A stretch of DNA of 64,000 nucleotides from Octopus sinensis (taxonomy: Eukaryota), in assembly GCF_006345805.1 (NCBI RefSeq), contig NC_042999.1, positions 166,966,001 to 167,030,000 of the forward strand, in the 5' to 3' direction. Below, piece after piece: positions 7,427 through 45,558 of the stretch. Each line of letters begins with the position of its first letter. The stretch's first letter is position 1. Position numbers and translations under genes: made by a program. Below the pieces are notes generated by a model. That model did not search any database. It saw only the letters and a program-made list of their open reading frames with translations, and was not told the origin of the DNA.

Positions 7427-7470
<44 letters not shown>

Positions 7471-15721: not shown

Positions 15722-16021
15722 ACTTAGATAACTTAGATATGTTTCGACCAGAGATTGGTTCAGGCCATGTCTAACTTAATAGCACCACCTGATAGGATTA
15801 TTCGGATCCTGTTTAAGTCAAGTTTTGTTCAAGTAGTGAGTTCTTGTTGGGTGAGTTGTATCAAGTTTTGTTCAAGTAGTGAGTTCTTGTTGGGTGAGTT
15901 GTATCCAATTATGGGTGGCTTATCTGGTATTCTTTGAAGGAATCTATCCAGACTCTGTTTAAAGTTGATGGGATCCTTTTCCTCTTTGATCTCCCTCGGG
16001 ACAATGTTAAATAAGGCAGGG

Positions 16022-20453: not shown

Positions 20454-20732
20454 TTTTAGTATATAACTAAGATATCACCTTTTACATAGGTGTTCAGTGT
20501 ATGTTAGCTTATTCCTGCCCTTGTTGAGCATACTAAAGGTTTTATTTTTAAATTAGGAAAATGTTTCTCACATCTTACATTATGGGTTTCTGAAACATTA
20601 TTTCCATTTTGGCAACCCCTAAATAAATATCTACCGAATATGGAACAAATCAGTGTGTGTTAATGCAAATCCATATTTTATTTGAAGGTGGGTGTATGAT
20701 TATGGTCGATTTCATAGTTTTCTGCATCCCAA

Positions 20733-20920
20733 AGGTGGCGATCTGGCAGAATCGTTAGCACCCCGGACAAAATGCTTAGTAACATTTCTTAAGCTTTCAC
20801 GTCCTGAATTCAGATGCTGTTGAGATCCACTTTGCCTTTTATCCTTTCAGGAGCGATAAAATAAATACCTCATCCTCCCTAAAAATTGCTGGTCCTCACC
20901 AAAATTTGAAACCACTATAT
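20733..20920 (+). mobile_element. Family A SINE (diverged)
   Basis: CTGGCAGAATCGTTAGCAC head, CTTTGCCTTTTATCCTTTC core, AAAATTTGAAACC tail. Confidence 0.8.
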
Positions 20921-21262
20921 TCCTACCACCTCCGAAGGCTGCAAAACGAAGTCGAGCTATAACCTATTTGGATTTAAGGAAGTCAATTGGTGGAAGCGAA
21001 TACTGAAAGGCGCTCAGGCTACACCGTTTCTCCTAAACTTATTTGCAAACCAATGAGTAACTTTGGAATGCTTTAAAGTCACATTTAACCGTGTGCGTAT
21101 TGGTACTGGCGGAATGAATGGACAGTCTATTATGTTCAGTGCTTCTCGAAGTGGACGGCTCTGCCTCCCAATGTTGTTGATGCAGTGGAAAATTTCGTAT
21201 GGCTACTGGGAATCGAGAGTAGCTACAGATCGTGTATAGTCTTTGATGTCTTGATCTATTAA

Positions 21263-24570: not shown

Positions 24571-24594
24571 CAGGTACAGGAGTGGCTGTGTGGT

Positions 24595-26636
24595 TTTTTG
24601 GCAGCTGCCGGTTGTCACGTGCTTCGACGTGAAATGTTGAATTTTTGAGACTCGACTACAGGTAGGCATTTGTTGAATTTTATTTAGGGGCCTAGTGAAG
24701 TTTATTGCTTTGCATTTAATAATTTTTAGCAAGTAATAGATTACACTTTGCTCCAGACATTTTTTCCTGCCTGTTGTCGAGTGTAAAGACTCACTTTGCA
24801 GTGAGAATTGTGTTTTTGAAGAGGCGTAGTTCCTCTGCAAAAATTGTTTTTGAAATTGTCTTTGTGTTATCCACGGGAATTACCAGGGAGTGCCAAGGAT
24901 TATTTTATCAAGAAGTTTTACCAGTTGTACATTTGGCCTAGAATACAATGTTTTGGCCGAAAAAAGTGAAAAAAAAAAAAAGAAAAAATTAATTCCTTTG
25001 CCTGGATTTGAACTCTCTTTCTCCGTCTATCATTTATTTTTTAAAAAAAAGAACTGTTTTTGAACTGCTATTTCTAATTTCATTTCTTCCCCTCTGTTGT
25101 ATTTTTCATTCTCCTTTCTGTGTCTTATTTTATTTTATCACATTTTGAACTGTTTTTGAACCTTACGTTATGGCAAAGAAATTCACTGTGTGGGAATTGA
25201 CACCTCCCAAAAAATATTTCAATGAGCTCGAGGAAAAGACCGTGGTGCTGAGGACATACTCGAAGTCGCTCGACACCATAGCAGTCTTTCCAAAGGCTAC
25301 TATTGTTAACGAGCTGGCAGACTACATGCCAGCCGTTAAATATATCGCACGGGGAGTTAGATACGCAACGGTTTGGTTGCTATTTGACTCCCCTAAAGCA
25401 GCTTGCGAATTTGCAAGCCAGCTCATTGAGGGCAAACACATATTGTTCCTCCCTAATTACAAGGGACAAAATTGTTGAGAGCTTGGATCTGCGGCTTACC
25501 ACCAGGCGTTGAGCCCGAGTGGATAGAGGACTCTATCCGCCGGGGCTTGGATGGTAGCAGTTCCAAGCTACTGAACGTAAAAGTACAGCCTGCGGCTGAT
25601 TGGGAGGGGTCAACAGCTGTTTTGACCCTATGGACCCAGTCAGCCAAAAGTCTGGTTTTTCCGGACTTTTTGAGGATGGCCGGGTCCAGGTATCCGGTGA
25701 TGCTTGAGGGACGCCCCCCCCCCAAGTGTCACCTGTGTCTGGAGACCGGCCACATTAAGAAGAACTGCCCCAGGGACCAAAGTAGGATCCTGGAGAAGTT
25801 GATATCGGAACCTCTCCCTGCCCCCCAAATGGAGGGAGAGAAACAGAACGAGGAAGCGGTGACTTCCTCAACGAGAAAACGAAAAGTGGGGAACAATGGT
25901 GACCCACTAAAAGACCCGGAAGCTACGGGAGAAAGAGTGGACCTGGCGTGTGCAACACCGGAACCTCAACCTCCCGTGGCCCACGGTAAAAAGAAAAAAA
26001 GAAAGAAGAGAAACGGAACGCCGCCAGCGGATTGTAACACGCAGACGGCGTCTCCCATGTCTCCTTCGGCGGTTGAGGGGCCGGAGAAATATTATGTAAT
26101 CCTCTTCTACAAAGGAGGAATATTAGAAAATGAAATAGGTAAAATGAGGAAGAGAAACTAATGGGAGGGTCTTCGGTCCTGCATGGAGGATCCCGAGTGG
26201 CCTTCGCAGCTGGCTGCAGAGGTCCTATTGGATAAAGATCTGTGCAGGATCGAGAATTCTTTCCCGGAGGACCTCTTTCAATTGATACCTGTATGCGGGG
26301 GCCTGACGAAGAACGATTGAGTCAATAAAGCAAGAACGTTCATCAGCCGGGTAACGTGAACCTGTTTTTGTATTATATTGAGATAGAGGTTTATTGCCTC
26401 TGGAAAAATTTTTGAATTTGTAATTTGTAATTTGTAAAATTTGGAATTTTTGTGAAATTTTGGAAATTTTGTGAAATTATTGAAAAAAGAACAATGTCTT
26501 AGAGAAGCGGAAGTCGGCGGGCGCTTTCGTCTTCTCCCATCACCATCTTCATTCCATTACCATCATTCATTAATGTCTATGTCCAGACCGTAGCTACTAT
26601 CTGTGTACTGCCCTTGTGGCAAATTAAATTAAATAA
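24595..26636 (+). mobile_element. Array element 1: ORF1-only L1/Tx1-type retroelement
   Basis: 5' UTR, ORF1 25170-26161 with a frameshift near 25470 and CHLCLETGHIKKNC zinc knuckle, no ORF2, conserved 3' UTR ending AAATAA. Confidence 0.8.
25170..26161 (+). pseudogene. Gag-like ORF1 with CCHC zinc knuckle (frameshifted)
   Basis: ORFs 25170-25478 and 25472-26161; collinear with the ORF1s of elements 3 and 4. Confidence 0.8.
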
Positions 26637-26651
26637 AGTAGCTCGCTAACC

Positions 26652-27000
26652 TCTGACGTGTTCGGACGTGTTTTTTGGCAGCATTCCTTCCCGATGGACC
26701 CATTTCAAATTATACCTCTAGACCACGACCTGACCAGCGATGATTGCCTCGTTGAGGCAAGAGCGCTGGTCGGCCGGGTAACATAGACTTATTGAACATT
26801 ATATTGTATTGAAAAAGAAAATTTGAAATTTTTGTGAAATTTTGAAAAAAAAAGGAACAATGTCTTAGAGAAGCGAGGGTCGGCGGGCGCTCTTGTCTTC
26901 TCCCATCACCATCTTCGTCCATCACCATCATTCATTAATGTTTTTTGTCCAGCCCGCAGCTACTCTATGTACTGCCCTAGTGGCAAATCTTATGAAATAA
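26652..27000 (+). mobile_element. Array element 2: internally deleted short derivative (5' start + distal region + 3' UTR)
   Basis: Starts with the same ..ACGTGTTTTTTGGCAG 5' motif and ends with the shared GAGAAG..CTTCTC/GTGGCAAAT..AAATAA 3' UTR. Confidence 0.75.
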
Positions 27001-27015
27001 AGTAGCTCGCTTACC

Positions 27016-28994
27016 TTTGTCGGAGACAGATGTGTTTTTTGGCGGAGAGTTCTTGCTGCATGAAGTCACGTCTTTCGTCGTGAAATATTGAGCTTTGAGG
27101 GTCGACTACAGGTAGGCGTTTGTTGTATTTTTTTGAGGGCTTAGTGGAGTTTGTTGCCCTGTATTTAATATTTTTTGGTGAGCAACAGTCTCTACTCTGC
27201 TCCAGACATTTGCCTGCCTGTGGTCGTGCGTAAAGACTCACTTTGCAGTGAGAATTGTGTTTTTGAGGAGGCGTAGCCCCTCAGCAAAAATTAATTTGTT
27301 TGCGAAAATTGTCTTTGTGTTTGCGAATTTCCACTGGATTACCAAGGAGTACCAAGGCAGGAAGGACTATTTTTGCGACTGGAGTACCTGTATTATTACG
27401 GAGTTGCGGAATTGTGTTGCCGTGGATTGAACTGTCTTCCTTCGTTCTTTTCTCTGCTCTGTCTTTCCGTTCTTTTTTTGTGTTTATTACTGAACTTTTA
27501 TTTAGAACATTTGAACTTTTGTTGAACTCTTTATTGGTTCTTTTGGGTTTTAAATCATGGCAACAAAGAAAACCACTGTGCTGGAGTGGGAAATTGTGCC
27601 CCCCAAGCAGTGGATAGAGGACCGAAATGAGAGAATGGTGGTGTTGGGGACATACTCCAAGTCACTCGACACCATCACTGTGTTCTCTCAGGACGAAATT
27701 GAAAAAGAGTTGGCAGAGTACCTGCCAACTATCAAGTATATTGCAATGGGTGTCAAATTTGCAACAGTGTTGTTACTCTTTGACACCCCTAAAGAGGTTA
27801 GCTTATTTGCAAGTCAACCTCTGGAAGGGGAAAACATTTTGTTTCTCCCCACATATCGTGGGAGGAAATTAACAAGAGCCTGGGTGAGTGGGCTGCCACC
27901 CGGAATAGAGCCTGAGTGGATAGAAGGTACTATCTGCCGGGGTCTAGGTGGCAGCGGAGCCAGGCTCTTGAATGTTAGAATGCTTCCTGTGGCTGATTGG
28001 GTGGGGTCGAAAGCAATTTTGACCCTATGGACCCAATCAGCCAAAGATCTGGTCTTCCCAGATTTTCTAAAGATGACTGGTGCCTGGAATCGGGTCACAT
28101 CAAGAGGAAGTGCCCCAACAACCACGCAAGGGCACTGGAAAAATTAATAGAGGAGGATGTTTTTCTTCCAAAGGAGCTTCCTGGGCATATAAAGGAGGGA
28201 GGTCTAGAAAAAGTCGAGGAGGAGGTAACCCCTTCGAAAGGAAAAAAAAGAAAGAAGGTTGGCAACAATGGATCCCATGGTGGCGGAGGGAAGGAGGGAC
28301 ATACGGACAGACCGGAGGAACCTCACCCTCCCGACGCGAAAAAGTGGAAAAAAAGAAAAGAAAGAAAAACGGGGCATCGCCGGCGGTTGCAGGTGCACCG
28401 GCGGCATGTTCTGAAACCCCTTCGGTGGAACGTGAGCCACCGGAGGTGGGGAAGAAGAAGGCCCCTCCCTATGGAAATGTTGAAGAACATGTCGTCTTCT
28501 ATCTCAGAGGAAGGGCTGTAGAGAATTATATAGAAAGTTCCTTTGATAGTCGGGATCTAATAGACTCGACTTGTATTGCAGGGTGGCCTCCGCAGGTGGC
28601 TGCCCGGGTACTGGAAGAAAGAAACCTCTATCACATAATGGACTCCTTCTCAAAGGAAGAGTATAGATCATGTGTAAAGGACCCCAACTTGCAGTTGCTG
28701 GAATGCCTGCATGAGGCAAAAAAGCTTATTAAAGACTCATTGATGTAATTGTTTTCAATTGTAATGGACATTTTTGCCCATAAAAGTGTAACAATATTGT
28801 AAGAGGTTTAATACCTCAAATATTAAAAAAACAAACAAACCATGTTTTAGAGAAGCAAAAGTCGGCGAGTGCTTTTTGTCTTCTCCCATCCTTATCATCT
28901 TTCGTTCATTATCATTCACCTCATTAATGTCCTTGTCCAGCCCGCAAGCTACCATACTCTATGTACTGCCTTTATGGCAAATTCTATAAAATAA
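27016..28994 (+). mobile_element. Array element 3: ORF1-only L1/Tx1-type retroelement
   Basis: ORF1 27557-28748 in two frames (MATKKTTVLEWEIVPP..; CLESGHIKRKC); a deletion near 28080 removes the first knuckle Cys; shared 3' UTR; no ORF2. Confidence 0.8.
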
Positions 28995-29009
28995 AATAGC
29001 TCGCTTACC

Positions 29010-30954
29010 TGTGGAAGTCGTCACGCTGGTGTGCAGTAGTCGAAAATTGAATTTGTAAGACGCTCTACCGTAAGGTAAGACCTTTTGCTCTTTGAGTCCA
29101 GTAGGATTTGTTGTCTGTAGGTTTTATTTATTTATTTATTTTTTTGCACAAGCAAGGAGTCCTTACTGGATTCGGAGCATTTTGTCTGCCTCGGTGGAGA
29201 CGTGTGTGTGTTTTCTCACATAATTGTGAGAAATTCTGTGTGGAGTTTACTCCAAATTGTTTCTGATTCACTGGATTACACAAAGGATTGACCAGGAATA
29301 CCATACGGCCGAAAATTATTTTTTGTTTGCCATTGTTTGAACTCTTCTTCTTACTATCATTTAGTTTTTTTAAAAAAAACTTATTGAACTGTTATTTTTT
29401 TCCTTCCCTTCTCTTGGGTCCTTTTTCTTTTTCTTTCCTTTTTGTGTTTTTTACTTTATTTTAAAAAACTGTTGTGAATTTTTTTAGTACTTTGTGTTAG
29501 GATGGCAAACGAATTGATAGTGTGGGAGTTGACACCTCTCAAGACATGGCTGAAAGAGTTCGAAAGGAAGACGGTGGTGTTGAGGACTTATTCAAAGTCG
29601 CTCGATACCATAACCGTCTTCCCGAAAGCCTCAATTATGAAAGAGCTGGCAGAATACATGCAATCCATTAAATATATTTCACGGGGGGTCAAATATGCAG
29701 CGGTCTGGTTGCTCTTTGACTCCCCCCAAGAAGCTTGCGAATTTGCAAGCCGGCCCCTGGAGGGCAATGAAATTATGTTCCTTCCCACTTATTATGGGAA
29801 GAAGTTGACGAGGGCTTAGGTCTGCGGTTTGCCACCCGGAATTGAGCCCGAGTGGATAGAGGATTCTATCCGCCAGGGTCTGGGTGGTAGCAGTACCAAG
29901 CTGGTCAATGTAAAAATTCTGCCTGCGGCTGATCGGGAGGGAGCAAAAGCTGTTTTGACCCTATGGACCAATCAGCCGAAAGTCTGGTTTTCCCCGATTT
30001 TTTGAGGATGTCCAGGTCTAGGTATCCGGTGATGTTCGAGGGACGCCCGCCCCCAAGTGTCACCTGTGCCTAGAAACCGACGACATCAAGAAAAACTGCC
30101 CCAAGGACCAAAACAGGGTTCTGGAACAGTTAAATCACTCCCTGCTCCTACTTTGGAGGGAGAGAAGGAGGAGGATGTCGAGGAGGTAGAAACCTCCTCG
30201 AAAAAACGAAAGCGAAAGGAGGGCAACCCACCGAAGGACCCGAGGGCTGCGGGAGGAATGGAGGACCTGCTGGACGCAGCAAAGGTACACCAATCTCCCG
30301 CGGTCCAAGGGTAAAAGAAAAAAGAAAAACAGGACATTGCCGGCGGTTTGTGACACGCTGCCGGCGTGTCCCCATGCTCCTTCGGCAGGTGTGCCGCTGG
30401 AGGAAGAATTTGTGGTCCTCTTTCACAAAGGGAGGGACATTGCAGAGTGTAATTGGCAAAATTGAAAGGAAGGGCCGGTGGGAGGGGCTTCTGTCCTGCA
30501 CGGAGGACCCTGAGTGGCCTTCGCAGGTGGCTGCGGAGGTCATGTGGGAGACCGATCTGTGCAGGATAATGAACTCATTCCCGGCGGACTCCTCAGATAT
30601 ATGATGAAATGTTCAAGTTTGAAACGGACCAGGTGCTTCAATGAAGCGAGTAGCCTGGTCGGACAGAAGAGTTGAATTGATGGACATTTTTGTAAGAGGT
30701 GTATTACATCAAAAAGACTTTGTTTTTTTTATATAAAAAGTAAGGGGATTATTGCCTCGTGTGTGTCGATTTACTGAACTGTGTAAGAGGTTTATAGCCT
30801 CATTATGTGATTTAAAAAGAAAAAGGAAAAATGTTTCAGAGAAGTGAAAGTCGGCGGGCGCTTTTCTCTTCTCCCACCCTTATCATCCTTGTATCATTAT
30901 CATTCATCCCATTACTGTCTGTGTCCAGCCCTTGTGGCAATTTTAATAAAATAA
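29010..30954 (+). mobile_element. Array element 4: ORF1-only L1/Tx1-type retroelement
   Basis: ORF1 from 29502 (MANELIVWELTP..KTVVLRTYSKSLDTI), TGG>TAG stop at 29817, later frameshifts; shared 3' UTR; no ORF2. Confidence 0.8.
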
Positions 30955-30969
30955 AGTAGCTCGCTTACC

Positions 30970-33900
30970 TTACAAGAGTTAACATGTCTTTCCTCGTGGT
31001 AAGAGTTTTTGCTGTTGTTATTGTTTCATTGTTGCTGTTTTGTTGTAATTACTTTTTGGATTTGTTACCTTTGAAACAAGGAATTACATTTGAACGATTT
31101 TGGACTGTTTTATTCCCTGGTCTTTCCGGGGAATAATTTAATAATTCAACACTTTCTCAAAAATTCTGAACTCTGGCAATTGTGGCTTTTTTTCTTCGTG
31201 TGTGAATAACATTTTTGAATTGTAACAGTCTTTTAGACTATTTTTGTGCCCTCCCCCTAATGGGGGTGGGATTTGAACTGTATTACATAATTAAAAAAAA
31301 ATTACTATCCTCTTTGATAGGAAAAAATATATATAGGTTTCCCAGTTTGTGTTATTAATTTCAACCATGTCAGTTGAAATTATACACGAAATGTGTGCTC
31401 TTATAAAGAGCAATGATGATGTCGACAGTCATGTCAACAATGGAAAAAAGTTTTCGGAGGTTGCCGCAGTGGCAACCGAAAATATTGATATGCCTGTAGG
31501 TGTGCTACAGGGATATTTTAAACGTATGAAAAAAGAAGGAGGTGATGTGATAATATCACCTTCTTCAACTGTGGTGGAAACTGAAAAGCGGACCGTAGTG
31601 TTCAAAACCTTCAGCCCAAAAGACAGAAGGTTTAAACACTTCAAAGAAGTGAAAATAGAGAAATGCCTGTCCCCGACACGGAGGGACATAATGTACATTA
31701 CAATGGGAAGGATATATGGCTCAGTCGAGGTTCGCTTCGCAGACGAAGAGGTGGCCCGTGGGCACGCCGCGTGTTCCCTAAAGTCAAATGAGGTGGTAAT
31801 TCTACTCATGTATATGGGGAAAAGAACATCTAGTGTAAGAATAAATGAAGTACCGCTTGAATAGGCCTAAGAGAAGTGCTGGCCGCCCTGTTGTTTGATA
31901 TGGCGGACCAAATAAAAATCTTACAAATAACATGCTCCAACCCCCAGAATTGACTCGGGCGAAGCATTACGGTCCTGATTCAGGGGACACAGGAGGACCT
32001 TCAGGTCCTACCAGAGAGAGTGCCTGTTGGGGAAAATGTGTCCCTTAGGGTACAGGTGGAAGGCCGTAAACCCACCTGTTACCAATGCGGAAAAAAGGGC
32101 CACAATCGAGCGGACTGTGAACAAAAAAAAAGTTGTCGCAAACACCAGGCCACTCAAATAACAAAACAAAACCACCCCCGCAAACACACCAATCCCCACA
32201 GACAAAAAATTCCCACTCCCCCTGTTGTGGTGCTAGCCCCGAAACAAACGACAAAAAAGACCCAGCCCCTGCACGCACAAGCCCCTACAAATATAAAAAC
32301 ACCCATCCCCTTGGAAGCTGTGGCACCGACTGCTCCAAAAAGTGTTGCCCCCACAGACGTTGACCTCTCAGACGACACCATGGAGGTATCAGAGGGTGGA
32401 TTTACAACACCTCGAAAACGAAAACCTTCCCCATCCACATCACCGCCCGAGAGAGTAAAAACCAAAACAATACACAAAAGACAATAAAAAAGAAATCCCG
32501 CCCAACTGACCCCGGAAGAAAAAGAGGAAAAGCTTGTCGAAGACGACACTACGGAACAATACACCAACGAAGCTATTGTGACACGTCAGATGACAAAACT
32601 TTATATTCAACATAAAGAATTAACGCGCAAGGGGGACGGGATAGGTAACTTTAGGCCCATAACTCTGTTAAACACAGAGTTAAAGATTTTGGCCAAGGTG
32701 TTGGCAAAAAGGTTGGCGCGGGTCATAGACAAACTTGTCGGGGAGGCGCAAAATTGTGCACTGGTGCATTTAGACCAGTCTAAAGCATTTGATAGGGTCG
32801 ACCATCGGTACTTGGCGGCGGTCCTCGGGGAGGATGGTCTGGGCCCGACCTTACGCGGTTGGATCGAGTCTGTTGTCAAGGAGAACGGGCTCTTTTCGAA
32901 GCCGTTCAGGATCGAGCGTTCAGTTCGCCAGGGGTGTCCCCTGTCCCCGCTTCTGTATGTAAGAGGAGCTACGGCGTACGCGGTTGACATCTCCATCATC
33001 GTGGCAGATGAAGGCCGGCTTCCAGTGGTGGAAGAGGCCATCAAGAGTTACGAGGCGGTGGCAGGAGCAAAGGCTCACAAGGACAGGTCGGTCGGGTTGC
33101 AACCCGGCACCGGGAGGGGCAAGCCGGTGCCGTCCAATAACGTCGCGTTGGACGGAAGGTCCTGTTAAGCTGCTCGGAGTCTGGATTGGTCCAGACCTCC
33201 AGATAGAGAAACATTGGAATGAGGTGGCCGGCAGGGTGACTGCTCTAACCCAGACCTGGTCTGTACGGACGTTATCCCTGCTAGGGAAGATGGAGGTGGT
33301 GCAGATGTTCATAGCATCAGTAATCACCTACCGTCTGACCGTGGTGCCTTGCGCCGATTTGTAGCTGAACAAATTGGAGAGAATCCTTTTCCGCTTTTTG
33401 TGGAAAGGAGGAAAGCCAGTTGGAAAGCGCTCTGTCAGTTGCCAGAAACCGCTAAAGGGTGGGCTAGGGATGCCTTGGCTGAAGATGCGAAAACTCGCAT
33501 TAAGGTTGAGGCACCTCTAGTTTTACCTGGATGGAGAGCAGGTGTGGTCAACGCACGTTCGGTTCTACCTTCCCCAGTTAATATCCTTCACGGACACCGG
33601 TGCATAGATCAAGCGGAGACCTAAACAGGAGTTCTACCGCGGATTTCTATAGCCGGTTAGTGAAATTTATATCAGAAGACGTCTTGGGGGAGACCCTGGG
33701 CTACGATGAAAATCGGTTGGTCAACCTGTTCCGAGAACGTTAATTACCAGAAATCCCTGGCCTGGCAGTGTTTCCGTGCGGCGTTACCTGTTCGCGACAA
33801 GCTGTCAAGGCACGGAAGTGCCGTCTCGCCGACATGTCCGCGATGTGTGCGGTATAGGGAAATCGTCTTGCACGCATTCGTGGAGTGCCCGGAGTTATCG

Positions 33901-34387
33901 GGACTGATTGCTTTTGCCGAACAACTGTTGTCAGTGAGTGGAAGAGTACAGCTATTAGCAGAGTCTATCGTCGAGATTATGCCACCTGCTTTCCTCAGCG
34001 GGGAAAGAAAGGCTTGATTTTCCTGCGTAGTTGTCATACTGAAAGAAACAGTATGGAAGATGCGTCCGAAAGGTATAGTGACAGGTACCTTTATATCCGG
34101 CCAGGGGTTGGTTAACTTTTTTAGTTACCATCTCGGTAGTAAGATCAGGCTGGAGAAGAGGTGTCTGTCACGAGATATGTTTGTGAAAAGATGGAAGCCT
34201 GTAACTTGTAAGCTGGGTATGTTTGGCACCAATTATGTGTGGCCAGATCAAGAAGTAAAGGTTCTACCCAGATGGATGAGTTCCTTGCCCTACTATGTAA
34301 CATTAAATTTGTAAACTTTCATTGAAATTTGTACCCATCATATTAATTTTTAAAACGTTTTAAGCTGCTTCACCTATATGTTTGTAA
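30970..34387 (+). mobile_element. Array element 5: L1/Tx1-type LINE, ORF1 + internally deleted ORF2 (no endonuclease)
   Basis: ORF1 with CYQCGKKGHNRADC. RT motifs FRPITLLNTELKILAKVLAKRL, LDQSKAFDRVDH, VRQGCPLSPLLY, YAVD; C-terminal CPRC..HAFVECP. Confidence 0.88.
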
Positions 34388-34619
34388 AGTAGCTCGCTTA
34401 CCTCTGTCGTGGATAGACGTGTTTTTTGGCGGTGAGTCAAACGTTTTGTTGAGCGTTGAATAATTTTTCTATTGGAATTGTTGTTTATTGTTGAATATTT
34501 TTGAACTGTTGAACATTGTTGAACTTTGAAAATATTTGTGCTTTTCCCCGGTGACGAGAGAAAGTAATTGTTCAAATATTGAAATTATTAATATTATTAA
34601 TATTGAACTTATTAAAGCT

Positions 34620-35040
34620 GTTGTAGGCTTTATTGCCCCCCCCCCCATCGGGGGTGGGATTTGAACTGTTATCCTCATTAAGAGGAAAACATATTATAGG
34701 TTTTCCGTTTTTTGGGATAAGCAATTTATTATTGCGTGAAAAATTAAATTTCAGCCGTTGTAGGCTCTATTGTGGCATCCACCCCTAGCGTGGGCGAGAT
34801 TTGAACTGTTGTCCTCGATGTGAGGGGAAAAAAATATTATAGGTTTCCCGTTTTTTTTTTGATTCTGTATTTTTATCATTGTGTGAAAAAAAATTCGAAC
34901 GTTGTAGGCTTTGTTGCTACGTCTCGTCTCCCCAGCAGGGGTGGGATTAGAACTGTTGTCCTCGTTGAGAGAAGATAAAAGTAAAAAATTACAGGTTTCC
35001 CATTTTATGGGATTAAATTGTGTATAATTTATTTCGAACG
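34620..35040 (+). repeat. Three ~140-bp tandem monomers in the 5' UTR of element 6
   Basis: GTTGTAGGCT at 34620, 34757 and 34901, each followed by GGGATT(T/A)GAACTGTT(A/G)TCCTC-like and TATAGGTTT-like motifs. Confidence 0.8.
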
Positions 35041-35381
35041 ATATATGTCGGTCGAAATAATTCAAGAAACAAACCAGCTGCATGAGCCAGCAAAAATGTT
35101 CGCGGCAGTAGCCGCTGTTTAGTGTAAAAATGTTGTAATAGAAACGGAGAAGCTCTCCGAGCTTTTTGAGAGAATGAAAGAGGAGGGTGGAATATAAAGA
35201 TATCACCCTCCCTTAGTATTGAAAATATGAAGAAAAGGACAGTCGTTTACTTAATGTACTGTCTTTCATCGAAAAAATTCAAGCACTTCGAAAAGTGCGA
35301 AACAGAAAAATGCCTGGCCCCCATATGGAAATATATAAAATACATAGCGAGGGGCCGAGCATACGGAACAATAGAAGCCAG

Positions 35382-35821
35382 GGATCTTTTCGGTTTGAAC
35401 GGCAGTTTTTTCTAGCGGTGTCATATGAAATTGTCACCCATAATTATGACCCTAGTATCGATCTATTGCATTTCAATCTGTTTTAGGCTTAGGGTTAGTT
35501 AGGGTTAGTTAGGGCTTGGGTTAGGGTTAGGGGTGGGGGGAAGGGTATCTTTTTTTCTTCACAAATGTAAATAAACCTAATCTGTTTCTTAAATGAGGGA
35601 CATATTCATACGGCACAGAATGTTTTTTAACGTCATCGATTGGTTGAAATTTCAGAAATTGAAGAAAAAAAACAGCAAATAGCTTACAAACTATAAAATT
35701 TTCTCAATAAAGCCAAGATAAAAAGATGTTTTATAAACACATTCTACCAGTATACGAAGTTTAAAATTTTTTAGTTACCGAGAAATTGTGTTAAAAACTG
35801 CCGTTCAAACCGAAAAGATCC
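35382..35821. mobile_element. MITE with 28-bp perfect TIRs and 8-bp TSD (Merlin-like GG termini), containing TTAGGG-like repeats
   Basis: GGATCTTTTCGGTTTGAACGGCAGTTTT / AAAACTGCCGTTCAAACCGAAAAGATCC; flanks GAAGCCAG and GAGGCCAG; excision restores the ORF1 reading YGTIEARFEMTE. Confidence 0.85.
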
Positions 35822-38800
35822 GAGGCCAGATTTGAGATGACTGAAAAAGCCCAAGAGCACTCAGTGAGTCCTCTGAAAACGAAGGAGATGATGCTGCTCC
35901 CAGCATACACGGGAAGGAAAACAGCACGCGTCAGAATAAATGAAGTACCACCAGAAATTGAGGCAAGGGAGGTGATAGCCGCCCTGTTGTATAACAGAAC
36001 GGACAAAATCACCTTCCTCCAAATCACATGCACTGCCCCACAAAATTGGCAAGGGCAGAGCATCACTGCGATTATTCGGGGAACACAAGAAGACATCGAA
36101 ATGCTGCCAGAAAGAATGCTCTTGGGGGAAGATATTGCCCTCAAGGTTCGAGTAGAGGGCAAAAAACCCACGTGTTTCGAATGTGGCAAAAAGGCAACAT
36201 TTGCGTAGACTGTGAAATATGGAAAAAAATAATAAGTGCGCAGACATCAGGCCCTCCAACTACAGAAAAAGACCCCAAACCCGCACACAAATTAACCCCC
36301 ACAGAAACAAATACTCCCACCCCACCATCTGTGGCACCCACTCCCAAATAAAACACCCAAAAATCCCAGGCCATGCACACACTGGTGCCGACCGAAACAA
36401 ATGCACCCACCCCCTCTGAAGTAACAACTCCTCTGGAAGACACCATGGAGGTGACCGAAGGGGAGTTCAAGACACCCAGAAAAAGAGAACACGTGCACCT
36501 TCCCTAATCATATCCCCCACAAAGAAAAAAGAAGAAAAACAGCACACCACAGAAAAAAAAAAAGATCCCGCTCCACTGTCTCAGAAGAGAAAATAAAACA
36601 GAACAAAGACGGAAAACCCTGGTAAAATTTGATACCAGGGATAAATAAATCATGGACACATTAAAGAAACATCACACCGTGGAGCTGTTGCAGCAGTCTG
36701 AAGACACGGAAGAGAGATGTGCCTGGATACCAGAAAAACTGTATAATGAAATGAAGGGTAGGCATCCGAGAGCCATCACGAACATCCCGGACATTCCACG
36801 GTATTTGAAGGAGCAGGAGGAAAGGACTGCCTCACGTGTGGTGAGGTCAGCCCCAGCATCACCAATTAAAGAAAAGTCAAAGAGTAAGTAGAACCCTTGC
36901 TTTGCTTTTGTTTTAAATGACTGCACTTAACCTTGGGTGTTTGAAAGTGCGTGGTCTGAGCTCGAAGTGGAAGCAAGCTTGTTTTCACGATATGCATGTG
37001 ATGGTTGCTACAGAGACCAAGCTGGACAGTCTACAAGCCCTCTCGCCCCTCCTGAATGACTATGAGGAAATCATGTCGCCTAGCTTGACTGGAGGGCTAG
37101 GGGGTGTAGTAGTACTGGTTCGAAAAGGCTTGGCTCTGCAGACAAATACAGTCTATGTAGACCCAGAAGGTGGGCTGGTTGTCCTTGATGTGACATACAG
37201 CAGTAAGGCCTTCTGGTTGATCGGAATCTATGCACCTTGTGCTTGAGGATTTCAAACTGATTTTTATCGGCGCCTAGAGAACTTTCTCGGGACGTCAAAG
37301 ACATTAGTGGTGTTAGGAGACTATAATGCTATTGTTGATGCGTGCATCGATAGCGTTGGCTCGATCTATAGGAAAGTAAACTCACGTCTCATAAATCTGC
37401 TCAAGCGTTTTCAGCTGGCTGATCGTTACAGACTTGACCATCCGAACGTCCCAGAGTGGACCTGGATGAGTGGCGACGGAAGGTTCAAGTCCTATTTAGA
37501 TAGGATAGTGATAAGAACTGGAGATAAGTCTAGTTTTAGCTGTCCACAGCATGTCCAAGTAGCTTACACTGACCATAGAATGGTTAAGTGTTGACTGGAC
37601 ATAGATAGTACAGTTAAGAGAGGATCCGGCTACTGGAAGCTGAATAAGTCTATTTTGACTTGCGAGGCATACTGTAGCCGGATTGAGGAATTAGTACAGA
37701 GGGCGTTAACCGGTGCGGTGATTAATAACCGATAGTGATTCGCCCTCAAGGGAGCCATTCGTTTTGAGTCTATTAGGTTTAGCCGTCAGCTAAGACTAGA
37801 TAAGGCCAGAACAGAAGAGCAACTAGTTAAGGACCTAGAGGAGGCGTTGATGTTGGGCTCTGCATCTCACATTTTGGCAGCGAAAACGGCCTTGGACCGT
37901 TACCTCAAAGCCAAACATGAGGGGTGCAGAGTTTGGGCTAAAGTGCGCGCATTGGGCCAGATGGGCCCTTACGATAGAAACCCAGCGTGGCAATGATACC
38001 ACAATTAGGTCTCTCGTGGATGACAATGGGTCGATGGACGGGACGAGATGTGTGAGACGATTCACAAGCACTTAGTAGAGGCATAGTGTCGGGTACCTTT
38101 GTATCCGACCAGGGGTTGTTTGGGAGTGGCGGGGCGCTGGATCATGGCGAGGTCCTTAGGGACTTCCTGTCTGGTGGCCCGCGTCTCTCGGCATGAGAGG
38201 CTGAGTGCTGCGAAGGGTCAATCACGGCCGAGGAGATGATCGAAGTACTGGGCGAATGTCCCGGGGAGATGTCACTGGGTCTCGATGGTCTGCCTTACGA
38301 ATTTTACAAAAGTATGCCAGACTTGTTCGGGCACCTGCTGGCCAGCGTCTACGCCAATTGGTAGCAGAATGTGAGAATTCCTAAGTCTGCGAGCCGGGAA
38401 GTGGTGACGTTGATCAAGAAGGACCCAAGCAAGGTGGGCGAGATATGTAACTTCAGGCCCATAACTCTGCTGAACACAGAGTTAAAGATTTTGGCCAAGG
38501 TGTTAGCGAAAAGGTTGGCGCGGGTCGTGGACAAACTTGTCGGGGAATGCAAACGTGCGCTATCCCGGGCAGGACGATCCACGACAATCTCCACCTTGTA
38601 CGCTACTCCTTAGAGAGGGTGGGAACGCTTTCTGGCACATGGCGGGTACTGGTACATTTAGACCAGTCAAAGGCATTTGATAGGGTCGACCATCGGTACT
38701 TGGCGGCGGTCCTCGAGAAGGCTGGCTTGGGCCCGACCTTCCGCGGTTGGATTGCTGCGTTGTATAGAGACATCGAGTCCGTCGTAAAAGTGAATGGTTT

Positions 38801-40389
38801 CCTTTCGAAGCCATTCAGGATCGAGCGCTCAGTGCGTCACGGGTGTCCCCTGTCCCCGGTTTTGTATGTACTGGCTGTTGAGCCATTATTGCAGAAGTTG
38901 GAGGCACTAGGGGGCGCACCGCATGATCTATGGATGGAAGAGGAGCTACAGCGTATGCGTTGACATCTCCATCATTGTGGCGGATGAGGACCGCTTCCAG
39001 TGGTGGAAGAGGCTATCAAAAGTTACGAGGCGGTGGCAGGAGCAAAGGTTAACAAGGACAAGTCAATTGGTTTGCAGCTCGGCACCTGGAGGGGCAAGCC
39101 AATGCCGTACAATAACGCTGTGGGGCGTTGAACGGAAGCTCCTGTTAAGCTGCTCGGAGTGTGGCTAGGACCGGACTTCTAGATAGAGAAAAATTGGAGT
39201 GAGGTGGCCGGCAGGGTGACTGCTCTAACCCAGACCTGGTCCGGGTGGGCGTTATCTTTGCTAGGAAAGGCGGAGGTGGTGCAGATGTTTATAGCATCGG
39301 TTATCACCTACCATCTGACCGTGGTGCCTTGCCCCGATTTGTGACTGAACAAGTTGGAGAGAATCCTTTTCCGCTTTTTGTGGAAAGGAGGAAAGCCTGT
39401 TGGAAAGCGCTCTGTCTGTTGCCAGAAACCGCTAAAGGGTGGGCTAGGGATGTCTTGGTTGAGGATGCAAAAATTCGCGTTAAGGTTGAGGCACCCTTGG
39501 CTTTACCTGGATGGAGAGCAGGTGTGGTCGCCGCACGTCCTTAACGGACATTTGTAATTGGATCAAGCAGAGACCTAGGCTTGGGGACTGGCAATTGGAG
39601 TGCTGCCAGGCACTTCAGCTACTCTCTCGGGCGGGTAATGCCGGCAATAGGAGTTCCACCGCAGATTTCTATAGCCGGTTAGTGGAGGTTAAGTCCGAAG
39701 GCTTGCTTTTCTGCGTAGTAGCCATACTGAAAGAAACAGTATGGAAGACGCGTGTGAGAGGCATAGTGTCGGGTACCTTTGTATCCGGCCAGGGGTTGGT
39801 TAACTTTTTTAGTTACCACCTCAGTAATAAGACCAGTCTGTAGAAAAGGTACCTGTCAAGAGACAGATTCATGCGAAGATGGAAGCCTGTGGCGAGGAAG
39901 CTGGGAGTGTTTGGCACCAGGTAAGTGGAAGCCAAAAACAGGAAAGAAAAAGCAAGGGGTCTACCCTGGTGGTCGGATGCCTATCCTTCAGAGAAGCCAT
40001 TACAAATTTCATTTGTAATGAGCAACGCTTAAGTCAAAAATTATAAACATTTTCATTAAATTATTGTATTTTTAAATTGTAAATATTTAATCGCTACAGC
40101 TTTTGTTTGTCTCTTCTTGTTTGTCCCCTCTTTGTAATGCCTTCATGGCAAATATTTATGAAATAAAGTAGCTTGCTTACCAACCATATTGTTCCGGGTT
40201 CATTGCCACTGCGTGGCACCTTAGGCAAGTGCCTTCTACTATAGCCTCGGGCCGACCAAAGCCTTGTGAGTGGATTTGGCAAACGGAAACTGAAAGAAGC
40301 CCGTCGTATATATATATATATATATGTATGTATATTCTCTAGTTTCAGCTCGGAGCTGTGGCCATGCTGATGCACCGCCGTTTTGCTAC

Positions 40390-43300
40390 ATATGTGGCAC
40401 TAATAGCCTCCTCTAATATGTGGCACTTGGTGAATCATGGAGTTTGATATAGCTACCCTCATTTGCACCTCTTGCAGTGAGGTAGATTTATCTGGAACTC
40501 TCAACAAAAAGAGGTCCAGTTTTGATTTGAAAACTCCTACATCTACTTTGTGCAAGTTCCTCAGACTCTTTGGGAGAATATTAAAAAGCTGTGGGCCCTT
40601 GAAACCCAGGCTGTTGCAGAGACTGGTCCTGGAGCACAATGGCATTGCTGGGATCTATGGCACTTTTCAGTGTCGTCCCTTTCTGGCATTAGTGTACCTT
40701 TCAATGCCAACATTTGGCACAATTCCTTCCAGGATCTTCCAGATATATATTACTGCATACCTCTCCCGTCTTCTTTCCAGGGTGTAGAGACTTAGCTGTT
40801 TCAACCTTTCTCAGTAGCTGAGCTGTTGCAAAGAGACGATCTTCTTTGTGAATCTTCTCTGCATTGCTTCAAGGCCCGCTATTAATTTCACACTGGTGGG
40901 TGACCACAGCTGTGAGCAGTAATCCAAGCGGCTGAGGACGAATGTCCGTCAGAGGACCATCATGGTTTCCTTATCTCTGGTTCTGAATGTTCTTAGGATC
41001 CATCCTGCCAGTCGTCTGCACTTTGTCGCCATCCTGGTAATGTGCACTTGGAAAGAGGTATCATCACTCATGTCGATACCCAGGTCCCTCACAGTCTTAG
41101 GCTCTGGGATTGAAATTCCCTGTGGACCGGTGTATCCTGTAAGTTTAATATTCAGTTTTGGATGCTGGTAGCGCAGGGCCTGGAATTTTTCAGCATTAAA
41201 CTACATATTCTTATCCTCAGCCCATCTGTAAATTGAGTCCAACTCCTGCTGCAGGTGTGCAACATCGCCGGGGTTCTGTATTTTCTGCGAGACTTTAGTA
41301 TTATCTGTATAGCTTGCAAGGGTGGCTATCCGGGCATTTGAGGGCATATCTGAGAGGGCCACTATAAAAAGAAGTGGTCTCAAGACAGCGCCCTGTGGAA
41401 CACCCCTCACTATTTGTGTGTTCATAGAAGTGGCTCCATTAGCCACTACTGCCTGACTCCTATCTTTCAGGAAGTCATGTAACCACTCTCCAAGTTTTCC
41501 AGCTATGCGAAGGTCACGCAATTTGTGGCATATTATACCATGATCCACCTTGTCAAAAGCTTTTGCAAAATCAAGGTATATTACGTCCACATTTGATTTG
41601 TTGAGTAACTGCCTCAACACCCAGTCATAATGTTGTAAGAGCTGGGTCAGGCAGCTCCTTACCTGGTCGAAAACCATGCTGGGTATCACTCAGCAAGTTA
41701 TTTTCTTCAAGTTTCCCTTTGACTATCCGTTCCATGACTTTGCTGATGCGTGAAGTCAGAGAGATAGGCCTATAGTTTTTGGCATCGGCTCTACTTCCCC
41801 CTTTATGTATTGGGCATATTATTCCCTCCTTCAGCTTGCTTGGCGGTTTGCCATTTGTAAGAACGCTCTGGAAGAGAATCTGGAGGGGTTTTACCAGGGC
41901 ATGCTTACGCGATTTGAGGAGGATTGCTGGGAAACCATCAGGACCAGCAGTTGAGTTTGTGTCCACTTCATCTATGGCTAGTAGGATATCTTCTTCGCTA
42001 ATGTCAATGTATCCCATTGTAGCTGCCTCACTGGTTATAGGTGAGGCGCCAAAGAAGTCCACTGGTTCGTTCACTTGTCTGTGTTCCAACGGGGTAGTAA
42101 AGACACTTTTGAACTGGTCTTTCAGTATCTCACTGATCTTAGTTGGACTGTCTGTGAGGGAGCCATTCTTTTGGAGGAGGTGTCCTATCTTGCAGTGCAC
42201 TGAGGCTGTTTCTTTCGCATAATGAAAGAAGGCCTTTGGGTTTGACTTAATGTTTTTTATAACCCAGGCTACTTTGTTTGCTTTCTCCCTCACATAGGAT
42301 TGTTGCAGCCTTTTTTCGATCTCCAGTGTTGTTTTTAGGCGGGACGTTTCGCTACTTTTGGGATGTTGGTTGAGTCGATTTGCATCCTTCGTCCGTCGTC
42401 TCATGAGGATCTTCCTCTCCCTTGGAATCTTGCTCCTGTTTGTTTTGGCCTTGTGCTCTGGGACATATTTCTGGCATATGGCTTGGACAGAAGACATGAA
42501 ACATACTAGTTTCATGTCAATGTCTGGTGTGGAGAGACATTTCGGCCAGTACTCTCTGAGGATCTCTTTTTGGATTGATTTCCAATCTGCTTTGTGGAAG
42601 TTCAGATTGGAGAGATTTCGGGTGCTTCCTTTAGGCTGTATGTCTCTGGTTACTTTCGGCCCAAACATAGACAGCTCTATTATGTTGTGATCCGAGACTA
42701 ATGTCGGTGTCACTTTCACATCATGAATGATGTCCATATTGTTCGTGAAGCAGAGATCCAGAATGTTAATCGCCCTAGTTGATTTGAGTACAACTTGCTC
42801 CATGAATAAGGCATTGGTGAGGTTGAGCAGGGACTCCACCTGTGCTTGCTTGCAATGACGTTGGGGAAGTTGAAATCACCTATAAGAAATATGGTCACGT
42901 GGTGTTCCAGATTCATGAGGATTTCTTTAATTCTTGTGAGGTAACCTTCAAACTTGCCTATGTGGTTTGGAGCATCCGATGGGCAATATGTATTGCATAT
43001 GACTATATTATGTTGTCTTATGTATACAATTAAAGTGTCACATACCGAATTTGAGTATGTCATTGAGACCTGGGGTGAGGTCATCTCGGATGTATACAAC
43101 AACTCCTCCATGGCTCCTTTCTCTTCTGTCTTTTCGCAGTATGGCATCGTTTCAGGGTTGAGATGAGTTTCCACAAGTGCTATGCATAGGGCTTGATTGC
43201 AATCAGTAAAAATCTCTCAGGAAAGAAAGTTTGTTTTTATTTTGATGTGACAGGCCCCCAATATTTAGTAAAAGTATTGGGATGACGACTGTGCAGGCGT

Positions 43301-45487: not shown

Positions 45488-45554
<67 letters not shown>

Positions 45555-45558
45555 TATA

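What the first reader, a model, noticed from the sequence alone, without database searches (positions are those of the whole stretch)
24572..40310. SINE-targeting L1/Tx1-type retrotransposons stacked six-deep at one site
Seen: one family B SINE is split between GTGGCTGTGTGGT (24594) and AGTAGCTTGCTTACC (40167). Six same-orientation elements fill the gap, and the SINE motif (A)GTAGCTCGCT(T/A)ACC recurs at each junction (26637, 27001, 28995, 30955, 34388). The elements are clearly divergent from one another, arguing for serial independent insertions rather than tandem duplication. Established: Tx1-clade LINEs with CCHC ORF1 and APE-RT ORF2 include sequence-specific families (targets such as tRNA arrays, U2, 5S, microsatellites, other transposons). 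Inference: a lineage here targets the tRNA-derived head of an abundant SINE between boxes A and B, regenerating its target as a TSD and using SINEs as safe-harbour landing pads.
Basis: partly seen in the sequence, partly recalled or inferred. Interest (0 to 1): 0.9.

Follow-up and report, generated by a model that had tools for sequence, protein, structure and literature searches.

The report
LINE stack inside one octopus SINE
Six related retrotransposons sit head to tail at one exact position in a short octopus repeat (a SINE), apparently because this L1/Tx1-type family cuts that spot and recreates it each time; this behaviour is already known for Tx1 elements, with a target type I did not find reported.

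Summary
One SINE is split exactly between its positions 23 and 24 (window 24594 | 40166), with nothing lost or gained. Six same-strand units fill the 15.6-kb gap. Each junction carries the SINE 16-mer AAGTAGCTYGCTWACC.

The units are only 68-88% identical and differ in structure, so this is not a recent tandem duplication. Only two units carry ORF2. E6 has the APE endonuclease and RT; E5 has RT and zf-RVT, with the endonuclease deleted. E1, E3 and E4 are 2-kb ORF1-only elements, and E2 is a 364-bp mini-copy.

Two independent Octopus sinensis loci show a relative of E3/E4 starting right after the same SINE position. The upstream motif there matches the local SINE subfamily. That fits a true ~16-bp target-site duplication that is hit again.

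Relatives in Argonauta end in (TCTA)n, and another relative forms tandem arrays.

Tx1-clade elements are already known to target other transposons with 16-bp duplications and to form tandem insertions sandwiching a duplication (PMC4494074). So this is a new member of a known kind, not a new mechanism.

Still open: formal Tx1 placement, a genome-wide flank census, and why all five internal motifs read CG where every SINE copy seen reads TG.

The parts
24572..24594 (+). 5' part of the split SINE (positions 1-23, including the box A-like TGGCTGTGTGG)
   Evidence: Aligns to SINE positions 6-23 at 100%; sequence read.
24595..26651 (+). E1: ORF1-only element, missing about 20 nt at its 5' end, joined directly to SINE ...GTGTGGT with no motif copy on its left. 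ORF1 is at 25170-26320 with 1 frameshift and 1 stop. The last 16 nt are junction motif J1, AAGTAGCTCGCTAACC.
   Evidence: frames; CCHC knuckle; no ORF2 remnant; 3' end alignment.
26652..27015 (+). E2: 364-bp internally deleted copy. It keeps the 5'-terminal ~30 nt (TCTGACGTGTTCGGACGTGTTTTTTGGCAGC) and the last ~330 nt of an E1-like element. It ends in J2, AAGTAGCTCGCTTACC.
   Evidence: (85% identity to the E1 3' end).
27016..29009 (+). E3: full-length ORF1-only element. ORF1 is at 27557-28748 with 2-3 lesions. It ends in J3, AAATAGCTCGCTTACC.
29010..30969 (+). E4: ORF1-only element. ORF1 is at 29502-30604 with about 7 frameshifts or stops. It ends in J4, AAGTAGCTCGCTTACC.
   Evidence: (74% identity to E1 over 1.3 kb).
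30970..34402 (+). E5: LINE with ORF1 (31367-32487, CCHC) and an ORF2 remnant (32554-34233). The remnant has RT and C-terminal zf-RVT; the first ~480 ORF2 residues, including the endonuclease, are deleted. It has a different 3' tail and ends in J5, AAGTAGCTCGCTTACC.
   Evidence: RVT_1, 53.6 bits; zf-RVT, 33.1 bits; matches ORF2 residues 483-1138 of P0003.
34403..40165 (+). E6: near full-length LINE. It has three ~140-bp repeats in the 5' UTR, ORF1 from 35045 (CCHC), APE endonuclease at 36917-37594 and RT at about 38260-39540. There are at least 15 stops or frameshifts and internal rearrangements.
   Evidence: Exo_endo_phos, 35.3 bits; RVT_1, 46.8 bits.
35382..35821 (.). Secondary insertion in E6 ORF1: a MITE with 29-bp terminal inverted repeats and an internal (TTAGGG)n-like run. 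It is not part of the LINE.
   Evidence: sequence; TRF; six more copies in O. sinensis locus L003.
40166..40318 (+). 3' part of the split SINE (positions 24-176). Its first 16 nt are J6, AAGTAGCTTGCTTACC, the only junction motif with TG instead of CG. The box B-like GGTTCATTGCC follows.
   Evidence: 92% identity over 153 nt to an intact copy.

Best explanation
A group of related L1-group (Tx1-like) non-LTR retrotransposons in octopods inserts sequence-specifically into the head of an abundant SINE.

Proposed steps:
1. The APE-type endonuclease nicks the bottom strand at GGT^AAG (SINE position 23|24).
2. Reverse transcription is primed there from an RNA whose body ends in ...GGCAAAT..AAATAAA.
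3. The top strand is cut about 16 nt downstream (..TTACC^AACC). A full-length insertion is therefore flanked by a 16-bp duplication, AAGTAGCTYGCTTACC.
4. The upstream copy still sits behind the SINE's GTGTGGT, so the site is recreated and can be hit again. Repeated hits build a head-to-tail stack with one motif between each pair of units.

The stack probably grew leftwards, with E6 first and E1 last. Growth at the left end stopped when the 5'-truncated E1 joined without a duplication.

The ORF1-only elements (E1, E3, E4) and the mini-copy E2 encode no RT. They are presumably moved in trans by an E6-type ORF2 protein, with which they share the terminal ~54 nt and the first ~35 nt.

Shown: the anatomy, the domains, the exact split, the recurrence of the junction at independent loci, and the local origin of the upstream motif. 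Inferred: the nick positions, the order of insertion and trans-mobilisation.
For: - The SINE is split exactly at 23|24, and all six units are on the same strand with the same 16-mer at every junction.
- The units are 68-88% identical over parts only and belong to at least two ORF1 lineages (21% amino-acid identity, E 5e-9). They are therefore separate insertions.
- None of these units occurs elsewhere in the window.
- E6 has Exo_endo_phos plus RVT_1, and E5 has RVT_1 plus zf-RVT. Intact homologues have APE + RVT_1 + zf-RVT. The best solved relative is human L1 ORF2p at 9e-63, against R2 at 1e-27.
- In O. sinensis loci L001 and L003, E3/E4-like elements begin immediately after the SINE head plus motif.
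- Their motif versions (..GCTTGCTTCC..AAGAAGTTTGCTTCC) match a second SINE subfamily also present in the window. The upstream copy is therefore local target DNA, and two SINE subfamilies are hit at the homologous position.
- E5 has a different 3' tail but the same motif after it. Relatives share the ...TGTGGC.AATAAA tail but are followed by other sequences: (TCTA)n in Argonauta and TTGTCAGTATACTG in contig L005. The motif is therefore target-derived, not part of a conserved tail.
- Tandem arrays also occur in relatives. L005 has three copies in a row, two with complete 1143-aa ORF2s and the first cut by the contig end; L002 has two copies.
- Coding lesions run at about 2 per kb in E1 and E3 and about 5-6 per kb in E4, E5 and E6. 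This is weakly consistent with leftward growth.
- There is published precedent in the Tx1 clade: targets include other transposons, a 16-bp duplication is described, and tandem insertions sandwiching a duplication are attributed to sequential insertion (PMC4494074).
- L1-Tx1 families are annotated in octopus genomes (PMC13282606 and PMC8967140).
Against: - Only three genomic sites were available. Both O. sinensis copies have lost their 3' ends, and no SINE remainder lies downstream of them. A complete head-element-tail structure is therefore seen only in the window.
- All five internal motifs read GCTCGCT, while 0 of about 12 SINE copies examined do. A pure duplication model needs an extra early T>C change, or an atypical SINE copy.
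- The expected leftmost motif copy is absent, which needs an irregular 5' joining of E1.
- RT phylogeny against Tx1 and L1 references was not possible.
- In another organism (ENA sample ERZ21867824), relatives with the same tail have different flanks at different loci. Strict specificity is therefore not universal in this group.
Confidence: 0.7

Rival explanations
1. The 16-mer travels with the elements rather than being duplicated from the target. It would be carried as read-through past the AAUAAA at the 3' end, or as a 5' extension from a master copy sitting in a SINE. Arrays would then arise by annealing or template switching between such terminally redundant RNAs, or by retrotransposition of pre-formed multi-element transcripts.
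For: - All five internal motifs share CG, while no SINE copy seen does. The only motif that is not the 5' neighbour of an element (J6) has the SINE's TG.
- The 5'-truncated E1 lacks an upstream motif, and the outer SINE shows no duplication.
- AATAAA lies directly before the motif, so a polyadenylated transcript would be expected to include it.
- 5' extensions taken from the target are described for Tx1-mobilised SINEU-2 (PMC4494074).
Against: - In L003 and L001 the upstream motif carries the sequence of the local, second SINE subfamily, not the CG variant.
- E5's different tail is followed by the same motif.
- Without any duplication, a second insertion at the single remaining motif would leave no motif between units.
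- Relatives with the same tail are followed by unrelated sequences.
Confidence: 0.15
2. A single composite insertion was amplified locally by tandem duplication or unequal crossing-over and then diverged.
For: The arrangement is head to tail with a constant short junction sequence.
Against: - The units differ in architecture: ORF1-only, a mini-copy, ORF1 plus truncated ORF2, and near full length.
- E1-E4 share nothing with E5 and E6 except about 54 nt at the 3' end (with E6 only) and, for E2, E3 and E6, about 35 nt at the 5' end.
- The two ORF1 lineages are only 21% identical.
- Identities of 68-79% among E1, E3 and E4 are far lower than the ~93% identity of the host SINE copy to its family.
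Confidence: 0.04
3. The elements have no real sequence specificity. The pile-up would be a chance nest in a permissive region, or an assembly artefact joining repeats.
For: There is no read-level evidence for the window. The region is repeat-rich, with SINEs and MITEs throughout.
Against: - The junctions are identical to the nucleotide at six boundaries, and the SINE is restored exactly when the flanks are joined.
- The same junction is present at two other loci in a different assembly.
- The motif count is 11 against 0.36 expected.
- Divergent units are not what repeat collapse or expansion produces.
Confidence: 0.05

Closest known systems
Tx1-Mar LINEs and the SINEU-3 elements they mobilise in crocodilians (Kojima 2015, PMC4494074)
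   Same: These are L1-group elements with an APE endonuclease that insert at a fixed position in another abundant transposon. They make a 16-bp target-site duplication, form tandem insertions 'sandwiching a TSD' by sequential insertion, and non-autonomous partners share the target.
   Different: The target here is a SINE head rather than a Mariner DNA transposon. The non-autonomous partners here are ORF1-coding 2-kb elements and a mini-copy, not snRNA-headed SINEs. Clade membership of the octopus elements was not tested by phylogeny.
Xenopus Tx1L in Tx1D, and Keno, Kibi and Koshi (named with targets in PMC4494074), plus Dewa and Mutsu (targets from my own knowledge of Kojima & Fujiwara 2004)
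   Same: They are sequence-specific Tx1-clade LINEs that use multicopy, dispensable targets: a piggyBac-type transposon, the U2 gene and microsatellites. The Argonauta relatives here end in a (TCTA)n microsatellite, like Kibi and Koshi.
   Different: None of the targets named in the texts I read is a SINE. The tRNA-array target of Dewa and the 5S target of Mutsu rest on my own knowledge; the passages retrieved did not describe them. A SINE head with box A/B-like motifs is the nearest analogue to Dewa's target, but homology of target recognition is unknown.
HAL1 (half-L1), the ORF1-only L1 derivatives of mammals, and Drosophila HeT-A
   Same: They are retrotransposons that encode only the ORF1/Gag-like protein and depend on another element's RT. 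E1, E3 and E4 keep this architecture despite 25-30% mutual divergence, so they were propagated as ORF1-only units.
   Different: This comparison rests on my own knowledge plus titles retrieved. The elements here are site-specific and share both termini with the putative autonomous partner. Trans-mobilisation is inferred, not shown.
R1 and R2 rDNA-specific LINEs
   Same: They make precise, repeated use of one site in a multicopy sequence. In R1, from my own knowledge, downstream target sequence in the transcript helps precise priming. AATAAA directly before the motif suggests the octopus transcripts also include target sequence.
   Different: R2 uses a restriction-like endonuclease and a single ORF, and its RT is a much weaker match (1e-27 against 9e-63 for L1 ORF2p). 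The targets are rRNA genes, not a transposon.

Membership tests
L1-group / Tx1-clade non-LTR retrotransposon | ORF2 with an N-terminal APE-type endonuclease, an RT and a C-terminal zinc-binding region | tested here: met
   E6 has Exo_endo_phos at 35.3 bits (cut-off 24.5) and RVT_1 at 46.8 bits. E5 has RVT_1 at 53.6 bits and zf-RVT at 33.1 bits (cut-off 27.5). Intact homologues carry all three domains. Human L1 ORF2p matches P0003 residues 3-856 at 9e-63.
L1-group / Tx1-clade non-LTR retrotransposon | ORF1 with a CCHC zinc knuckle and no L1-type Transposase_22 domain | tested here: inconclusive
   CX2CX4HX4C is visible in E1, E4, E5 and E6. Pfam zf-CCHC scores 17 bits, below the 20.8 cut-off. 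There is no Transposase_22 hit. The RRM-like part has no Pfam match.
L1-group / Tx1-clade non-LTR retrotransposon | RT domain clusters with Tx1 references rather than L1 or other clades (RTclass1-type phylogeny) | not testable with these tools
   No labelled Tx1 or L1 reference sequences were reachable, and homologue hits carry no clade names. Octopus 'L1-Tx1' families are reported by others but were not linked to these copies.
Sequence-specific (target-specific) LINE | Independent copies share the same insertion point in the same target sequence | tested here: met
   There are three independent loci: the window, L001 and L003 in O. sinensis. All have a 5' junction immediately after the SINE head plus motif, in two SINE subfamilies. 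One locus has the exact 3' continuation of the SINE. The sample is small, and no genome-wide census was possible.
Sequence-specific (target-specific) LINE | Target-site duplication derived from the local target and regenerated between tandem insertions | tested here: inconclusive
   The upstream motif is local in L001 and L003, and one motif lies between each pair of units. However, the internal motifs read CG while all SINE copies seen read TG, the leftmost copy is missing, and no locus shows both flanks of a single insertion.
ORF1-only non-autonomous LINE derivative (HAL1-like) | Several diverged copies keep ORF1 and both termini, and lack any ORF2 | tested here: met
   E1, E3 and E4 share one architecture at 71-79% identity. 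tblastn with an intact ORF2 finds nothing in E1-E4 at E <= 1. They share 54 nt of 3' tail with E6 at 79-85% identity. O. sinensis LOC115225585 is an intact ORF1 of this family.
tRNA-derived SINE (SINE2) as the target | Head recognisable as tRNA-derived, with box A and box B | tested here: inconclusive
   Box A-like TGGCTGTGTGG and box B-like GGTTCAGTCCC flank the site, and an acceptor-like stem plus a hairpin can be folded. ARAGORN finds no tRNA, Rfam gives no tRNA match, and the fold z-score is -0.74.

The most novel reading that the evidence does not exclude
Octopods may harbour a group of Tx1-like lineages, both autonomous and ORF1-only, that have specialised on one nucleotide position inside a hairpin (GGTAAG..CTTACC) of the octopus-expanded SINE. 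Recognition would depend mainly on the SINE sequence upstream of the nick. Arrays would then grow in one direction only, leftwards, until a truncated insertion caps them. The shared CG in internal motifs would reflect either an endonuclease preference for a rare SINE variant or copying of the motif from the element RNA. This would be a SINE-targeting class of site-specific LINE, with a compact and defined endonuclease target.
Probability: 0.3. Interest if true: 0.55.

Novelty: new member of a known kind. Interest (0 to 1): 0.4.

Why it matters
SINEs make up over a tenth of the Octopus vulgaris genome (PMC13282606). A LINE group that lands only in a fixed SINE position would have an enormous supply of harmless targets. 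It would inactivate the SINE copies it hits, because box A and box B become separated. It would also generate long nested arrays that confuse repeat annotation and assembly.

It adds a SINE to the list of Tx1-type targets. It gives an example of ORF1-only elements sharing a site-specific partner's target. It also offers a short, defined endonuclease target for biochemical study.

It does not reveal a new mechanism.

Tried and rejected
- A scan of JGI metagenome contigs for AATAAAGTAGCTCGCTWACC gave one hit, a bacterial contig (L006). This is a chance match in a coding-region end and is irrelevant.
- An exact look-up of a window ORF (27557-28147) found nothing on record.
- Rfam and ARAGORN on the SINE gave no tRNA, only noise hits to miRNA and CRISPR models in the microsatellite tail.
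- A 'terminal redundancy' model, in which the motif is carried at both RNA ends with no true duplication, explained the CG/TG pattern and the missing left copy neatly. I set it back after one search showed that the upstream motif in L001 and L003 follows the local SINE subfamily.
- The shared oddities of the L001 and L003 heads (AGGC....TTCC) first looked like a SINE head co-mobilised with the element. They are features of a second SINE subfamily that is also present in the window.
- The many ENA homologues come from one unnamed eukaryotic assembly. Their 3' tail signature is conserved, but flanks differ between loci, so they gave no clean target, and I stopped there.
- The third homologue search gave no source names, so it could not place the clade.
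- The paper on Tx1L endonuclease specificity (PMC85248) is not held.
Full report
**What is there.** The window is octopod DNA. Homologues of its reading frames come from Octopus sinensis and Argonauta hians, and it is full of one SINE family. An intact copy reads AGGCGCAGGAGTGGCTGTGTGGTAAGTAGCTTGCTTACCAACCACATGGTTCCGGGTTCAGTCCC....

At 24572-24594 a copy of this SINE stops after position 23 (...GTGTGGT). It resumes at 40166 with position 24 (AAGTAGCTTGCTTACCAACC...). Alignment to an intact copy shows that no base is lost or duplicated.

The 15.6 kb between the two halves consists of six units on the + strand. Each ends in (A)AAGTAGCTCGCT(T/A)ACC. The 14-mer is found 11 times in the window at up to 2 mismatches, against 0.36 expected. 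The remaining hits are other SINE copies.

**Anatomy of the units**.
- **E1** (24595-26651), **E3** (27016-29009) and **E4** (29010-30969) are ~2-kb elements. Each has a ~0.55-kb leader, one reading frame of ~370-390 codons with a CX2CX4HX4C knuckle, and a ~0.3-kb trailer. tblastn with an intact ORF2 finds no trace of endonuclease or RT in them.
- **E2** (26652-27015) keeps only the first ~30 nt and the last ~330 nt of such an element.
- **E5** (30970-34402) has an ORF1 and an ORF2 remnant matching residues 483-1138 of an intact relative. That covers RT (RVT_1, 53.6 bits) and zf-RVT (33.1 bits), but no endonuclease.
- **E6** (34403-40165) is near full length. It has ORF1, an APE endonuclease (Exo_endo_phos, 35.3 bits) and RT (46.8 bits). 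It is riddled with at least 15 stops and frameshifts, and a MITE interrupts it at 35382-35821.

The ORF1s of the E1 type and the E5 type are distant homologues (21% identity, E 5e-9). Nucleotide identity between units is 68-88% and covers only parts of them. E1-E4 share with E6 only the last ~54 nt. E2, E3 and E6 also share the first ~35 nt (TYTGWCG..GAYGTGTTTTTTGGCRG).

Nothing related to any unit occurs elsewhere in the 64 kb, although about nine other SINE copies there are intact at this position. These facts exclude a recent tandem duplication and make chance nesting very unlikely.

**Kind of element.** Intact homologues have the architecture APE + RVT_1 + zf-RVT and are 35-47% identical to the E6 translation. 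The closest named one is from Argonauta hians. Among solved structures, human L1 ORF2p is by far the best match (9e-63 over residues 3-856), ahead of R2 proteins (1e-27).

Together with a CCHC ORF1 and the absence of an L1-type ORF1 domain, this places the elements in the L1 group. 'L1-Tx1' families are already annotated in octopus genomes (PMC13282606 and PMC8967140). I could not run an RT phylogeny against labelled Tx1 and L1 references, so 'Tx1 clade' remains a well-motivated label, not a tested one.

**Is the motif target or element?** Three lines of evidence say target.
1. E5 has a different 3' tail from the other units, yet the same 16-mer follows it.
2. Relatives keep the tail signature ...TGTGGC.AATAAA but are followed by other sequences. 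In two Argonauta copies lying 6 kb apart this is (TCTA)n. In an ENA contig with three tandem copies, two with complete 1143-aa ORF2s and the first cut by the contig end, it is TTGTCAGTATACTG.
3. Two independent O. sinensis loci were found through an annotated ORF1 protein. Each contains an E3/E4-like element whose 5' end starts immediately after SINE positions 1-36. These are L001:9452-9487 and L003:15703-15738.

In those loci the motif reads AAGTAGCTTGCTTCC and AAGAAGTTTGCTTCC, and the heads read AGGC[AG]T... These are the features of a second SINE subfamily that is also present, uninterrupted, in the window at 60101(+) and 7595(-). The upstream motif copy is therefore local SINE DNA. The same position is used in two SINE subfamilies that differ at 4 of the 16 motif positions but share the upstream GTGTGGTAAG.

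**Mechanism proposed.** Target-primed reverse transcription would start from a bottom-strand nick at GGT^AAG, with a top-strand cut ~16 nt downstream at ..TTACC^AACC. This gives SINE head - 16-mer - element - 16-mer - rest of SINE.

The upstream 16-mer still lies behind the SINE head, so the site is recreated and can be used again. Each further hit adds one unit and one motif.

This is the behaviour described for Tx1-Mar LINEs and SINEU-3 in crocodilians. There the duplication is 16 bp (AGGTTCCCATCAGCAT) inside a Mariner transposon, and 'tandem insertions sandwiching a TSD' are attributed to sequential insertion (PMC4494074).

The internal junctions have lost either the SINE sequence upstream or the SINE sequence downstream of the motif. 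The second subfamily conserves the upstream part. I therefore infer that recognition lies around and upstream of the nick, and that the stack grew leftwards from E6 to E1. Lesion densities fit this weakly: about 2 per kb in E1 and E3, against about 5-6 per kb in E4, E5 and E6.

E1 lacks its first ~20 nt and joins GTGTGGT through a single shared T, without a motif copy. A truncated, irregular 5' joining of this kind would explain why the outer SINE shows no duplication and why growth stopped.

The ORF1-only elements and E2 cannot supply RT. Their shared termini with E6 suggest trans-mobilisation, as for HAL1-type elements. This is inference.

**What does not fit cleanly.** All five internal motifs read GCTCGCT. 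The terminal one and all ~12 SINE copies I could inspect read GCTTGCT or a further variant, never CG.

Under the duplication model, one early T>C change in the upstream copy would suffice if all later insertions used that copy's descendants. An atypical SINE copy followed by CpG decay of the last motif would also do. Either is an extra assumption.

The alternative is that the motif is copied from the element's RNA. AATAAA lies directly before it, so transcripts probably include it. This would explain the pattern and the missing left copy, but it is contradicted by the local-subfamily motifs in L001 and L003. I rate this rival at 0.15.

Other limits:
- Both O. sinensis copies have lost their 3' parts, and no SINE remainder lies downstream. 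A complete single insertion with both flanks was therefore never seen.
- In an unnamed eukaryotic assembly (ENA sample ERZ21867824), relatives with the same tail have different flanks. Specificity is not a fixed property of the wider group.
- The SINE head is not recognised as tRNA by ARAGORN or Rfam.

**Comparison and novelty.** In mechanism and outcome this is the Tx1 pattern: a site-specific APE LINE, a repetitive and dispensable target, a long duplication and stacked arrays. What may be new is the target and the company it keeps.

The target is a fixed position inside a hairpin (GGTAAG..CTTACC) between the box A-like and box B-like motifs of the octopus SINE. The company is an ORF1-only lineage using the same site. 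My literature searches found no report of a SINE-targeting Tx1 or L1 element or of these octopus elements, but the library is incomplete and Repbase Reports are not covered.

I classify it as a new member of a known kind, of moderate interest (0.4). Its description of the six units and its novelty estimate were too generous.

Noticed in passing
window 35382-35821 (inside E6 ORF1); L003 at about 20657-21075, 32675-33072, 33757-34195, 42539-42952 and 45508-45934: A ~440-bp MITE with 29-bp terminal inverted repeats (GGATCTTTTCGGTTTGAACGGCAGTTTTT). It contains a degenerate (TTAGGG)n run at 35483-35532. It is abundant in O. sinensis, with several copies in 46 kb.
   Followed up: partly
window 25170-26320, 27557-28748, 29502-30604; L001 10001-10846: An ORF1-only retrotransposon family of ~2 kb with no ORF2 remnant. 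One intact ORF1 is annotated as a gene in O. sinensis (LOC115225585, 281 aa). It could be a HAL1-like parasite of the E6-type LINE, or in single cases a domesticated gene.
   Followed up: partly
window 26636-26651, 27000-27015, 28994-29009, 30954-30969, 34387-34402 versus 40166-40181: All five internal junction motifs have CG (GCTCGCT). The terminal motif and every SINE copy inspected have TG. No CA variants were seen, so simple CpG decay of the SINE family does not explain it.
   Followed up: partly
window about 24655-24665, 27105-27115, 29073-29085, 31005-31015; L001 about 9585-9595; L003 about 15838-15848: Every unit type has a splice-donor-like AG|GTAAG or AG|GTAGG 45-105 nt from its 5' end. 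E1, E2, E3 and E6 have a T6 run at nt ~20-26, which resembles a Pol III terminator, just downstream of the SINE's box A-like motif.
   Followed up: no
window 34609-35045: The 5' UTR of E6 contains three ~140-bp tandem repeats, each with CCCC..GGGGTGGGATTTGAACTGTT. One such unit is also present in E5 at about 31262-31290.
   Followed up: partly
window 38081-38130 and 39760-39810: There is an internal duplication in E6. A ~50-nt stretch from the ORF2 C-terminal region (ggcatagtgtcgggtacctttgtatcc.gccaggggttg) is also inserted between the endonuclease and RT regions.
   Followed up: no
window 60101-60206 (+), 7458-7595 (-): A second SINE subfamily is present (head AGGC[AG]TGG, motif region AAGAA.TTTG.T.CCCAACC). 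This is the subfamily hit at the homologous position in O. sinensis loci L001 and L003.
   Followed up: yes
window 61887-62123: Two SINE fragments lie in inverted orientation, separated and flanked by long (TA)n tracts. One copy lacks its head (it starts at position 25).
   Followed up: no
L002 4543-4590, 12758-12810, 13185-13230, 18827-18915 (Argonauta hians): Two related LINE copies lie 6 kb apart on the same strand. Each ends ...TGTGGCTAATAAAGAAA followed by (TCTA)n and then a 179-bp flank that is 99% identical between the two. Each is preceded by TTTTTCTTGTCTGTAAAACTCTATC. This looks like a microsatellite-containing repeat used as the target.
   Followed up: partly
L005 1-15884 (ENA ERZ25071366): Three head-to-tail copies of a relative, nearly identical across the junction regions read, with a ~6.5-kb period. 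Two have complete 1143-aa ORF2s, and the first ORF2 (945 aa called) is cut by the contig start. The junction reads AATAAA|TTGTCAGTATACTG|AAAAGAGG. The contig ends inside the array, so the target is not visible, and the organism is unknown.
   Followed up: partly
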